NCBI RefSeq assembly: GCF_001194135.2
Contig: NC_068991.1
Coordinates: 25,676,117-25,729,658 of the forward strand
Origin: Octopus bimaculoides
Lineage: Eukaryota
Direction: 5' to 3'
DNA length: 53,542 bases
Part shown: in pieces, positions 40,433-41,320 of the stretch
How the letters are laid out: the number at the start of each line of letters is the position of its first letter
How positions within the stretch are numbered: position 1 is the first letter of the stretch
Notes under the pieces: model-generated
Seen by the model: the letters and a program-made list of their open reading frames with translations, nothing else
The model's database searches: none
What the model was told of the DNA's origin: nothing
Position numbers and translations under genes: made by a program

Positions 40433-40596
40433 AAACGGAGAAAGAATGATAAACAAACGGGGAGAGAGAAAAATGTGTAGAGAGTAACAGTTCAACATAG
40501 TGATATATATGTATATATATATAGTTCACTATGTTGAACTGTTACTCTCTACACATAATTATCTCTCTCCGTTTGTTTATAATTCTTTCCCCGTTT
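40433..40596. repeat. Long inverted repeat H1 (71-bp arms, 65/71 match, 22-nt TA-rich spacer)
   Basis: Arms 40433-40503 and 40526-40596; the inner 31 bp are perfect. Confidence 0.95.
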
Positions 40597-40776
40597 TTTT
40601 CCCCTCTTGATCCTTTCTGTCAAAGAGTGTAGCCTCAAAACGCAAAATGGTTTTTCCATTGTGCCCGAGCGTTAAGCGAATACAGCTGCTTGCTGTTCTT
40701 ACACCTGTCTCCGTTTTATATTTTCTGTAAATTTGAAGTATACGTACATACATACATACATAGAAATATACATACC

Positions 40777-40828
<52 letters not shown>

Positions 40829-41070
40829 GAAGATATATTTAAGTATTTTCAAAAAATTGGAGAGGAACTGACCTGTCTTTCTGACATTTTCTGTCTTGTG
40901 TGTAGCTAAGGAATATTTGCTAATTTAAGGGACAGTGTCGGGGGTTGGTTGGGGTGGGGAACACTGTCCGTTAAAATAGCAAATATTCATTAGCTACACA
41001 CAAGACAGAAAATGTCAGCAAGACAGGCCACTTCCTCTCCAATTTTTTGTAAATTCTTAAATATATCTCC
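40829..41070. repeat. Long inverted repeat H2 (110-bp arms, 101/110 match, 22-nt G-rich spacer); foldback/MITE-like
   Basis: Arms 40829-40938 and 40961-41070, aligned base by base without indels. Confidence 0.97.
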
Positions 41071-41148
41071 TGTGTATATATACTACCAAACAAGCATGAC
41101 TTTTATTGAACACATAATACTTTTTGTAGTCCCGTTCTGAATACTTTC

Positions 41149-41320
41149 TTAAATACTGGTTATCACAAAAGTATTAAAATACAGTTATACATTCTTTGAT
41201 AATAAGAATAAAATGTTAAAAACAGTTTACAGGAAATTATAAACTGTTTTTAACATTTTATTCTTATTATCAAAGAATGTATAAATGTATTTTAATACTT
41301 TTGTGACAACCAGTACTTAA
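41149..41320. repeat. Long inverted repeat H3 (81-bp arms, 78/81 match, 10-nt loop)
   Basis: Arms 41149-41229 and 41240-41320; the inner 45 bp are perfect. Confidence 0.97.

What the first reader, a model, noticed from the sequence alone, without database searches (positions are those of the whole stretch)
40433..41320. Three unrelated long hairpins packed into 900 bp
Seen: H1 (71-bp arms, 65/71), H2 (110-bp, 101/110) and H3 (81-bp, 78/81) lie about 230 and 80 bp apart and share no evident sequence. I saw no comparable long inverted repeat elsewhere in the window. Of the six transition-type mismatches, five are A:C on the plus strand (G-U on minus). Established: coleoid cephalopods edit RNA heavily via ADAR, which acts on long dsRNA and favours A:C mismatches; long hairpins can also feed Dicer. 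Inference: either a hotspot of independent palindromic MITE insertions or a multi-hairpin RNA locus (endo-siRNA source or editing hub).
Basis: partly seen in the sequence, partly recalled or inferred. Interest (0 to 1): 0.7.

Follow-up and report, generated by a model that had tools for sequence, protein, structure and literature searches.

The report
Three palindromic transposon-like hairpins clustered together
Three unrelated 160-260 bp near-perfect DNA palindromes really do sit within 900 bp, but they look like decaying relics of small cut-and-paste transposons in a repeat-rich stretch of an animal genome, not a dedicated RNA gene; that is ordinary, though their genomic copy number could not be checked here.

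Summary
H1 (40433-40596), H2 (40824-41075) and H3 (41149-41320) have arms 89%, 92% and 96% complementary. They share no sequence with each other. They are the only long inverted repeats in the window that are not microsatellite. Under a uniform model, all three falling within 888 bp has p of about 1e-3.

The anatomy points to three independent, non-coding, palindromic MITE-like DNA-transposon relics in a mosaic of microsatellites and transposable elements:
- H3's repeat ends exactly on TTAA...TTAA, which fits a TA or TTAA target-site duplication.
- H2 has CACAG...CTGTG ends abutting TATATATA on both sides. Two mariner-like copies elsewhere in the window abut (TA)n in the same way.
- H1 carries a 9-mer (AAACGGRGA) five times. 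All five are at 40433-40716, against 0.34 expected in the whole window. This resembles subterminal transposase-binding repeats.

Arm mismatches are mostly pair-breaking (14 of 21). The A:C strand bias (5 of 6, or 5 of 7 on full arms) is not significant. No Rfam family is matched.

According to the literature, molluscs lack the Dicer-2/siAGO endo-siRNA pathway and lack giant miRNA hairpins. If transcribed, the hairpins would be generic, passive ADAR substrates.

Copy number, transcription, editing, orthology and even the cephalopod origin could not be tested, because no searchable collection holds the source genome. Confidence is about 0.55. Interest is low.

The parts
40433..40596 (.). H1: 164-bp palindrome with 82-nt arms, 89% complementary, centred on an (AT)10 tract. 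A weak gapped extension runs to about 40412-40617. GC is 32%. No target-site duplication was found.
40433..40716 (.). Five copies of the 9-mer AAACGGRGA. Two are forward in H1's left arm (40433, 40455; 22 bp apart). Two are reverse in the right arm (40566, 40588). A fifth, reverse, lies at 40708-40716, outside the hairpin. These are the only five in the whole window (0.34 expected). The fifth sits in a 19-nt stretch (40704-40722) that is inverted-complementary to H1's left end, which resembles subterminal TE repeats.
40739..40828 (.). (TACA)n/(TA)n/(CA)n microsatellite that abuts the left end of H2.
40824..41075 (.). H2: 252-bp palindrome with 115-nt arms, 92% complementary, and a 22-nt G-rich loop (CGGGGGTTGGTTGGGGTGGGGA). 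The termini are CACAG(A/G)AGATATATTTAAG. It is flanked by TATATATA(C) on both sides (40809-40817 and 41075-83). The left terminus carries a (CA)n expansion.
41149..41320 (.). H3: 172-bp palindrome with 81-nt arms, 96% complementary, and a 10-nt loop. GC is 20%. The inverted repeat begins and ends exactly on TTAA, and the flanks beyond it are unrelated.
39870..40235 (+). Context: a tRNA-derived SINE-like repeat with a B-box-like GGTTGTGAGTTCGATTCCCGG, lying just upstream. Diverged copies are at 37778-37890 and 4567-4665.
39454..39788 (.). Assembly gap (run of N) that bounds the 1.66-kb contig holding the hairpins. The other bounding gap is at 41451-41694. Both gaps abut (TA)n.

Best explanation
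H1, H2 and H3 are relics of three different small, non-coding, almost fully palindromic cut-and-paste DNA transposons (MITE-like or foldback-like elements). They inserted at different times into a TA-rich stretch of an animal genome that is a mosaic of microsatellites and other repeats, and they have since decayed neutrally.

Shown:
- The palindromes themselves.
- That they are unrelated to each other.
- Their different arm divergences.
- The terminal and flank features.
- The TE-dense context.

Inferred:
- That each belongs to a dispersed family mobilised in trans by a transposase. H3 would use a TA or TTAA target (Tc1/mariner-like or piggyBac-like). H2 would use a TA or 8-bp TA-rich target. 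H1's superfamily is unknown.
- That the clustering reflects target preference and tolerance for insertions in this kind of DNA.

Any RNA role would be passive. If the locus lies in an intron or UTR, the hairpins would form dsRNA and be edited by ADAR like any other inverted repeat.
For: 1. Size (164-275 bp), AT-richness (GC 20-37%), absence of coding capacity and full-length inverted repeats match the MITE form.
2. H3's repeat ends exactly on TTAA...TTAA, and the flanks beyond are unrelated. TA and TTAA are the Tc1/mariner and piggyBac target duplications.
3. H2's CACAG...CTGTG ends abut TATATATA on both sides, inside a (TA)n(CA)n tract. Two mariner-like copies in the same window have CAGGGTG-type ends that abut long (TA)n tracts in the same way.
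4. In H1, AAACGGRGA occurs 5 times, and these are the only occurrences in the 53.5-kb window (0.34 expected; 0 of 100 shuffles reach 5). One copy lies outside the palindrome, in inverted orientation to the left end. This pattern is typical of subterminal transposase-binding repeats.
5. Arm divergences of 11%, 8% and 4%, and the absence of shared sequence, imply separate events of different ages.
6. Of 21 arm mismatches, 14 are pair-breaking transversion types. This fits unconstrained decay and gives no sign that pairing has been preserved.
7. The window is a TE and microsatellite mosaic. It holds a tRNA-SINE just upstream, a LINE-tail family present 8 or more times, mariner fragments and 46 interspersed repeat pairs.
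8. In Octopus vulgaris, Tc1-mariner, piggyBac, hAT and MITE families are all annotated, some of them recently active (PMC13282606). This applies only if the source is an octopod.
Against: - The defining MITE feature, many dispersed copies, is untested.
- There is no second copy of any arm in the 48 kb of window sequence or in about 41 kb of related-looking animal contigs. That only excludes very high copy numbers, roughly above 50,000 per genome of a few Gb.
- H1 has no recognisable target-site duplication.
- The H2 and H3 'duplications' are short, self-complementary or microsatellite-like, so they could be part of the palindrome by chance.
- Three unrelated palindromic elements within 888 bp, with none in the other roughly 88 kb examined, is unlikely under uniform insertion (p about 1e-3). 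Some extra cause has to be assumed, such as target preference, nesting or local hopping.
- No terminal motif could be tied to a specific transposase family.
Confidence: 0.55

Rival explanations
1. The palindromes were generated locally. Each arose in place by fold-back priming or replication template-switching at a fragile, microsatellite-rich site. Unique local sequence was copied in inverted orientation, and no transposon was involved.
For: - H1 is centred on a self-complementary (AT)10 tract, the kind of short inverted repeat that can nucleate fold-back priming.
- H2's complementarity runs into the flanking (TA)n(CA)n microsatellite.
- No second copy of any arm was found anywhere accessible.
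- A local mutational hotspot would explain the clustering.
Against: - It needs three separate events of different ages (4-11% divergence) at one spot.
- H3's repeat stops exactly on TTAA.
- H1 has TE-like repeated subterminal motifs, including one outside the palindrome.
- The loops of H2 and H3 are not self-complementary.
- Template-switch palindromes described in the literature are usually much shorter (my own knowledge).
Confidence: 0.18
2. The three hairpins form one composite mobile or repeated unit. They would be internal parts of a single larger non-autonomous element, so their co-location is not a coincidence.
For: - The clustering is otherwise improbable.
- A fifth H1-type motif lies 112 bp beyond H1, which suggests that H1's element extends further than its palindrome.
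Against: - No terminal inverted or direct repeats bracket the whole 40.29-41.43 kb block.
- The arm divergences differ between hairpins.
- Microsatellites separate the hairpins.
- I know of no TE class built from three unrelated long palindromes.
Confidence: 0.1
3. This is a dedicated multi-hairpin RNA locus. One transcript (the minus strand folds slightly better) carries three long dsRNA stems that are selected as a small-RNA source or as an ADAR editing or sequestration hub.
For: - The predicted stems are very stable on both strands: -428 kcal/mol on plus and -476 on minus for 951 nt.
- Five A:C mismatches on plus correspond to G:U on minus.
- In octopus, most editing lies in intronic and 3'UTR hairpins (PMC9699675).
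- Inverted repeats of 50 nt or more at 80% identity or more are the generic editing substrate across animals (bioRxiv 10.1101/2020.01.19.911685).
Against: - The strand bias is not significant (p = 0.22 for 5 of 6; on full arms the split is 5:2).
- Two thirds of the mismatches break pairs on either strand.
- No Rfam family reaches its gathering score. The sub-threshold hits are generic hairpin matches on both strands.
- The stems are 2-3 times too long for canonical miRNAs, and molluscs appear to lack giant miRNA hairpins (PMC12553114).
- DICER2 and siAGO are reported lost in Mollusca, and no endo-siRNA signature was seen in Crassostrea gigas, the one mollusc whose small-RNA libraries were examined (PMC11114477).
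- Stable folding follows automatically from any palindrome.
Confidence: 0.07
4. The hairpins are an assembly or gap-closing artefact. They were created by mis-joining reads in a fragmented short-read scaffold.
For: The hairpins lie in a 1.66-kb contig between two N gaps that both abut (TA)n, in a window with 16 gaps.
Against: Artefactual fold-backs would give identical arms. These arms differ at 4-11% of positions, with different values per hairpin, and they have distinct loops.
Confidence: 0.03

Closest known systems
Palindromic MITEs derived from Tc1/mariner or piggyBac elements (for example human MADE1, the source of the miR-548 family, and palindromic MITEs of nematodes and mosquitoes; from my own knowledge)
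   Same: They are short (about 80-300 bp), AT-rich, non-coding and almost wholly inverted repeat around a small loop, with TA or TTAA at the ends. They fold into long hairpins if transcribed and are often found in introns and TA-rich DNA.
   Different: No copy-number data are available here. The termini do not match Hsmar1/MADE1, and the Rfam mir-548 match is 25.6 bits against a gathering score of 90. The arms (81-115 nt) are longer than MADE1's 37 nt. The window's own mariner-like ends (CAGGGTG...) differ from all three hairpin ends.
Drosophila hpRNA loci (hp-CG4068, hp-CG18854, hp-mir-997-1), which are endo-siRNA-generating hairpins
   Same: They are long, nearly perfect inverted repeats with stems well beyond miRNA length, and they sometimes occur clustered.
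   Different: hpRNAs need Dicer-2, Loqs-PD and AGO2, and they have sequence-matched target genes. The corresponding proteins are reported lost in Mollusca (PMC11114477). No target or small RNA can be shown here.
Inverted Alu pairs and other TE-derived inverted repeats that act as bulk ADAR substrates
   Same: The hairpins meet the generic criterion of an inverted repeat of 50 nt or more, at 80% identity or more, within 2 kb. In octopus, most editing is in intronic or UTR hairpins.
   Different: Each hairpin here is a single palindromic unit and not two separate insertions. Neither transcription nor editing has been shown.
Foldback (FB) elements of Drosophila and sea urchin (from my own knowledge)
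   Same: The whole element is essentially two long inverted arms. H1 has repeated motifs within each arm.
   Different: FB arms are hundreds to thousands of bp long and built of tandem subrepeats. Here the arms are 81-115 nt of mostly unique sequence. TRF finds no tandem array within the arms apart from the central (AT)10 of H1.

Membership tests
MITE (miniature inverted-repeat transposable element) | Small size (under about 800 bp) with no coding capacity | tested here: met
   The hairpins are 164, 252 and 172 bp. They contain only chance ORFs of 42 aa or fewer, which mirror each other on the two strands. These translations have no protein homologue.
MITE (miniature inverted-repeat transposable element) | Terminal inverted repeats | tested here: met
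   The inverted repeats run the full length of each element at 89-96% complementarity.
MITE (miniature inverted-repeat transposable element) | Target-site duplication flanking the element | tested here: inconclusive
   H3 ends on TTAA...TTAA (or TA), with unrelated sequence beyond. H2 has TATATATA(C) on both sides, but within a microsatellite. H1 has none. TA and TTAA are self-complementary, so they cannot be told apart from the last bases of the palindrome.
MITE (miniature inverted-repeat transposable element) | Many dispersed copies in the genome | not testable with these tools
   No collection holds the source genome. There is no second copy in the window, none in the 41 kb of L001 and L002 or the 743-bp L003, none in 5.8 billion predicted proteins searched with arm translations, and none in the viral or metagenome DNA scans.
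MITE (miniature inverted-repeat transposable element) | Termini shared with an autonomous partner element | tested here: not met
   The mariner-like copies in the window end in CAGGGTG or CAGAGTC. No hairpin terminus matches them or anything else in the window. Partners elsewhere in the genome cannot be searched.
Canonical microRNA precursor | Stem of about 30-35 bp and a match to a curated family | tested here: not met
   The stems have 71-117 pairs. No Rfam hit reaches its gathering score. The sub-threshold hits are to unrelated plant and animal miRNA models on both strands.
hpRNA / endo-siRNA locus | Long inverted repeat able to form an intramolecular dsRNA | tested here: met
hpRNA / endo-siRNA locus | Host has a Dicer-2/siAGO-type pathway, and 21-22 nt duplex small RNAs map to the arms | not testable with these tools
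   No small-RNA data are available. The literature reports DICER2 and siAGO lost in Mollusca (PMC11114477). The taxon of the window is itself unverified.
ADAR hyper-editing substrate | Reverse-complement alignment of 50 nt or more, at 80% identity or more, within about 2 kb | tested here: met
   the criterion is taken
ADAR hyper-editing substrate | The region is transcribed and shows clustered A-to-G RNA/DNA differences | not testable with these tools
   No RNA-seq data are accessible.
Foldback (FB) element | Arms composed of tandem subrepeats | tested here: not met
   TRF finds only the central (AT)10 of H1 and the flanking microsatellites. H1 has just two 22-bp-spaced motif copies per arm.

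The most novel reading that the evidence does not exclude
The three hairpins are co-transcribed (the minus strand is slightly favoured) as a conserved, selected multi-stem dsRNA. In a coleoid it would act as a dedicated ADAR-binding or editing hub, or as a non-canonical small-RNA source, in an animal group thought to lack the endo-siRNA pathway.
Probability: 0.05. Interest if true: 0.65.

Novelty: new member of a known kind. Interest (0 to 1): 0.2.

Why it matters
If the best reading holds, this is routine repeat annotation. It adds three palindromic non-autonomous DNA-transposon relics, possibly from undescribed families, and one example of DNA transposons piling up in (TA)n-rich DNA. Its practical value is as a caution: in TE-rich invertebrate genomes, such hairpins give spectacular folding z-scores and sub-threshold miRNA-model hits without being RNA genes. 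It would matter more only if expression and conservation data showed a selected dsRNA locus in a coleoid. That would bear on why cephalopods edit RNA so heavily and on whether molluscs make hairpin-derived small RNAs.

Tried and rejected
1. Exact-product look-ups of ORFs in or between the hairpins and of a TE ORF found nothing on record.
2. A concatenate of seven stop-free arm translations, searched against 5.8 billion proteins, gave no hit at E<=10. This is uninformative, because the database evidently lacks the source genome. A mariner fragment from the window found only two ENA proteins.
3. Exact-pattern scans with conserved arm cores found nothing. Three scans were of viral contigs and two were of JGI metagenome contigs.
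4. Rfam gave no gathering-level hits. The E-value hits (MIR840, mir-4536, mir-548 and others) fall on both strands and far below threshold, so I rejected them as generic hairpin matches.
5. ARAGORN found no tRNA. This also argues against a mitochondrial control-region insert.
6. Pfam on ten window ORFs gave no hits at E<=0.01.
7. I looked for a link between the hairpin ends and the window's mariner-like ends, and for terminal repeats bracketing the whole block. There was none.
8. The other 'long hairpin' at 1339-1577 and the 267-nt inverted repeat were rejected. The first is TA microsatellite and the second is N runs.
9. The supplement of the O. vulgaris repeat paper holds no TE library, so no family assignment was possible.
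10. Verification of the taxon failed. The retroelement-tail ORF hits many animal phyla at about 60-65% identity, and the best hits (84-89%) are anonymous ENA contigs.

Full report
**Observation**

The three hairpins are real.
- The repeat finder reports H1 with arms 40433-40514 and 40515-40596 (82 nt, 89% complementary, no gap).
- H2 has arms 40824-40938 and 40961-41075 (115 nt, 92%, 22-nt loop).
- H3 has arms 41149-41229 and 41240-41320 (81 nt, 96%, 10-nt loop).
- Gapped alignment shows that H1 continues weakly to about 40412-40617. H2 continues through CACAG/CTGTG into flanking TATATA.
- Across the whole window, every other inverted repeat of 40 nt or more with a gap of 400 nt or less is TA, CA or AAT microsatellite. 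This includes the one at 1339-1577.
- The 267-nt 'repeat' is two runs of N.
- The hairpins share nothing with each other and have no second copy in the window (blastn word 9; local alignments against shuffles).
- Each folds far better than shuffles on either strand (z = -17 to -32; whole region z = -33 to -34). That follows automatically from being a palindrome.
- Three points falling within 888 bp of 48,293 non-N bases has p = 1.0e-3 under uniformity. No complex hairpin was found in 41 kb of related-looking animal contigs. The clustering is therefore more than chance under a naive model, although the statistic is post hoc.

**The mismatch argument**

Five are A:C on the plus strand, which correspond to G:U on minus. 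The two-sided binomial p is 0.22.
- On the tool-defined arms the split is 5 A:C to 2 G:T.
- A transition share of one third is what unbiased random substitution gives. It is significantly below the two-thirds share typical of animal point mutation (p = 0.005).
- So nothing indicates that pairing has been preserved by selection, and the ADAR-flavoured A:C pattern is not statistically supported.

**Context**

- The window is a gap-ridden draft scaffold (16 N runs, 5,249 N) with GC of about 36%.
- It is a mosaic of microsatellites and transposable elements.
- The intact ORF at 15879-16232 has more than 1,000 homologues. The named ones are from shrimp, corals, a tunicate and Lingula, and I read the ORF by eye as the C-terminal part of a retroelement ORF. 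The best matches (84-89%) are in anonymous ENA contigs.
- One of those contigs (L003) also carries the window's most abundant repeat, which occurs 8 or more times.
- Mariner-like transposase fragments lie at 12436-12870 (+) and 13767-14072 (-).
- A tRNA-derived SINE-like repeat lies at 39870-40235, immediately upstream of the hairpins. Diverged copies are at 37778-37890 and 4567-4665.
- The source is therefore an animal genome.

**Anatomy of each hairpin**

- *H3.* The inverted repeat starts and ends exactly on TTAA (CTTTC|TTAAATACTGG...CCAGTACTTAA|CACAAC), and the sequence outside is unrelated. TA (Tc1/mariner) and TTAA (piggyBac) are the corresponding target-site duplications. Because they are self-complementary, they look like the last bases of the palindrome.
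- *H2.* It ends in CACAG...CTGTG and has TATATATA(C) on both sides, inside a (TACA)n(TA)n(CA)n tract. The left terminus has an expanded (CA)n. In the same window, ends of the mariner-like copies (CAGGGTG......CAGAGTC as reverse complement) abut (TA)n tracts of about 30-80 bp in just this way. Cut-and-paste elements sitting in TA tracts are thus the local norm. The length of the duplication (2 bp or 8-9 bp) cannot be read in a microsatellite.
- *H1.* This is the oldest hairpin (11% divergence), and it has no recognisable duplication. It does carry AAACGGRGA twice in each arm, 22 bp apart, and a fifth time in reverse orientation at 40708-40716, 112 bp outside the palindrome. That fifth copy lies within a 19-nt stretch complementary to H1's left end. 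These five are the only occurrences in the 53.5 kb (0.34 expected; 0 of 100 shuffles reach 5). Repeated subterminal motifs of this kind are typical of transposase-binding sites in DNA transposons and their MITEs (established knowledge).
- *All three.* They are 164-275 bp, have GC of 20-37%, and lack real coding capacity.

**Most likely explanation (confidence about 0.55)**

The hairpins are three unrelated palindromic, non-autonomous DNA-transposon relics (MITE-like) that inserted at different times, since arm divergence is 4%, 8% and 11%. They lie in a TA-rich, insertion-tolerant stretch and are decaying neutrally.
- Shown: structure, unrelatedness, different ages, terminal and flank features, TE-dense context.
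- Inferred: mobilisation in trans, family membership, and that clustering reflects target preference or nesting.
- If the source is an octopod, Tc1-mariner, piggyBac, hAT and MITE families are all annotated in O. vulgaris (PMC13282606).

**Rival explanations**

- *Local inverted duplication (0.18).* This would arise by fold-back priming or template switching at a fragile microsatellite site. In favour: H1's (AT)10 centre, H2's complementarity running into the microsatellite, and the lack of any second copy. Against: the need for three events of different ages, H3's exact TTAA ends, and H1's extra motif copy.
- *One composite element (0.10).* This would explain the clustering. However, no bracketing repeats exist and the divergences differ between hairpins.
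- *A selected multi-hairpin RNA locus (0.07).* There is no positive evidence for it. No Rfam family is matched. The stems are 2-3 times miRNA length, and molluscs appear to lack giant miRNA hairpins (PMC12553114). DICER2 and siAGO are reported lost in Mollusca, and the one mollusc whose small-RNA libraries were examined, Crassostrea gigas, showed no endo-siRNA signature (PMC11114477).
- *Assembly artefact (0.03).* The 4-11% arm differences argue against it.

Passive ADAR editing is compatible with the best explanation. Inverted repeats of 50 nt or more, at 80% identity or more, within 2 kb are the generic substrate across animals. In octopus, most editing lies in intronic and 3'UTR hairpins (PMC9699675).

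**Limits**

None of the collections holds the source genome.
- A window-encoded mariner fragment found only two ENA proteins at 63-68% identity.
- Exact look-ups failed.
- Arm translations found nothing.
- DNA pattern scans found nothing.

Copy number, empty sites, transcription, small RNAs, editing and orthologous conservation are therefore untested, and these are the decisive data. The absence of a second copy in about 90 kb only excludes families at SINE-like abundance.

**Verdict**

This is an ordinary kind of feature, a new member of a known kind. The clustering is mildly curious and the interest is low.

Noticed in passing
window 13202-13295 and 14531-14572: Two mariner-like copies meet across a (TA)n tract of about 70 bp (...CACGCCCTG(TA)nCATATACAGGGTGTG...). 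The second copy (about 13.28-14.53 kb, about 1.25 kb) is flanked by (TA)n at both ends. Either the TA target duplications have expanded into microsatellites, or the elements inserted into existing TA tracts.
   Followed up: partly
window 39870-40235 (+); also 37778-37890 and 4567-4665: A tRNA-derived SINE-like repeat with a B-box-like GGTTGTGAGTTCGATTCCCGG. ARAGORN calls no tRNA. There are three diverged copies in the window.
   Followed up: partly
window 22892-23059, 23661-24118, 28080-28249, 29846-30049, 10476-10628, 668-886, 45053-45172; L003 85-321: The most abundant interspersed repeat of the window (8 or more copies, 70-88% identical). It also lies next to the retroelement-tail ORF on the ENA contig L003 (ERZ15185604), so it is probably the 3' part of a LINE or a SINE that shares its tail.
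   Followed up: partly
window 15879-16232 (+): An intact 117-aa ORF (PDIVVKDHEGKKCLLIDVSIPADDNV...) has more than 1,000 homologues. The named ones are from shrimp, corals, a tunicate and Lingula. It has no Pfam domain. It looks like a widespread, conserved C-terminal module of a retroelement ORF.
   Followed up: partly
L001 and L002 (ENA ERZ21867824, contigs of 79 and 136 kb): A 'metagenome' assembly contains long contigs with 35% GC, the same TA/CA microsatellite style and a mariner about 70% identical to the window's. This is probably host (animal, possibly cephalopod or other mollusc) DNA in a metagenome data set.
   Followed up: no
window 40939-40960: The loop of H2 is a G-run sequence (CGGGGGTTGGTTGGGGTGGGGA) with possible G-quadruplex potential on the plus strand.
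   Followed up: no
window 46163-46449 and 5515-5838: Long AAT/ATT-type and GA/AT-rich trinucleotide tracts give poly-Asn, poly-Ile and poly-Glu/Asp pseudo-ORFs. These are low-complexity sequence and not genes.
   Followed up: no
window: 16 N runs (for example 39454-39788 and 41451-41694): Assembly gaps almost always abut (TA)n or (CA)n tracts. N runs are reported as 'perfect' inverted repeats by the repeat finder, which is an artefact to ignore.
   Followed up: yes
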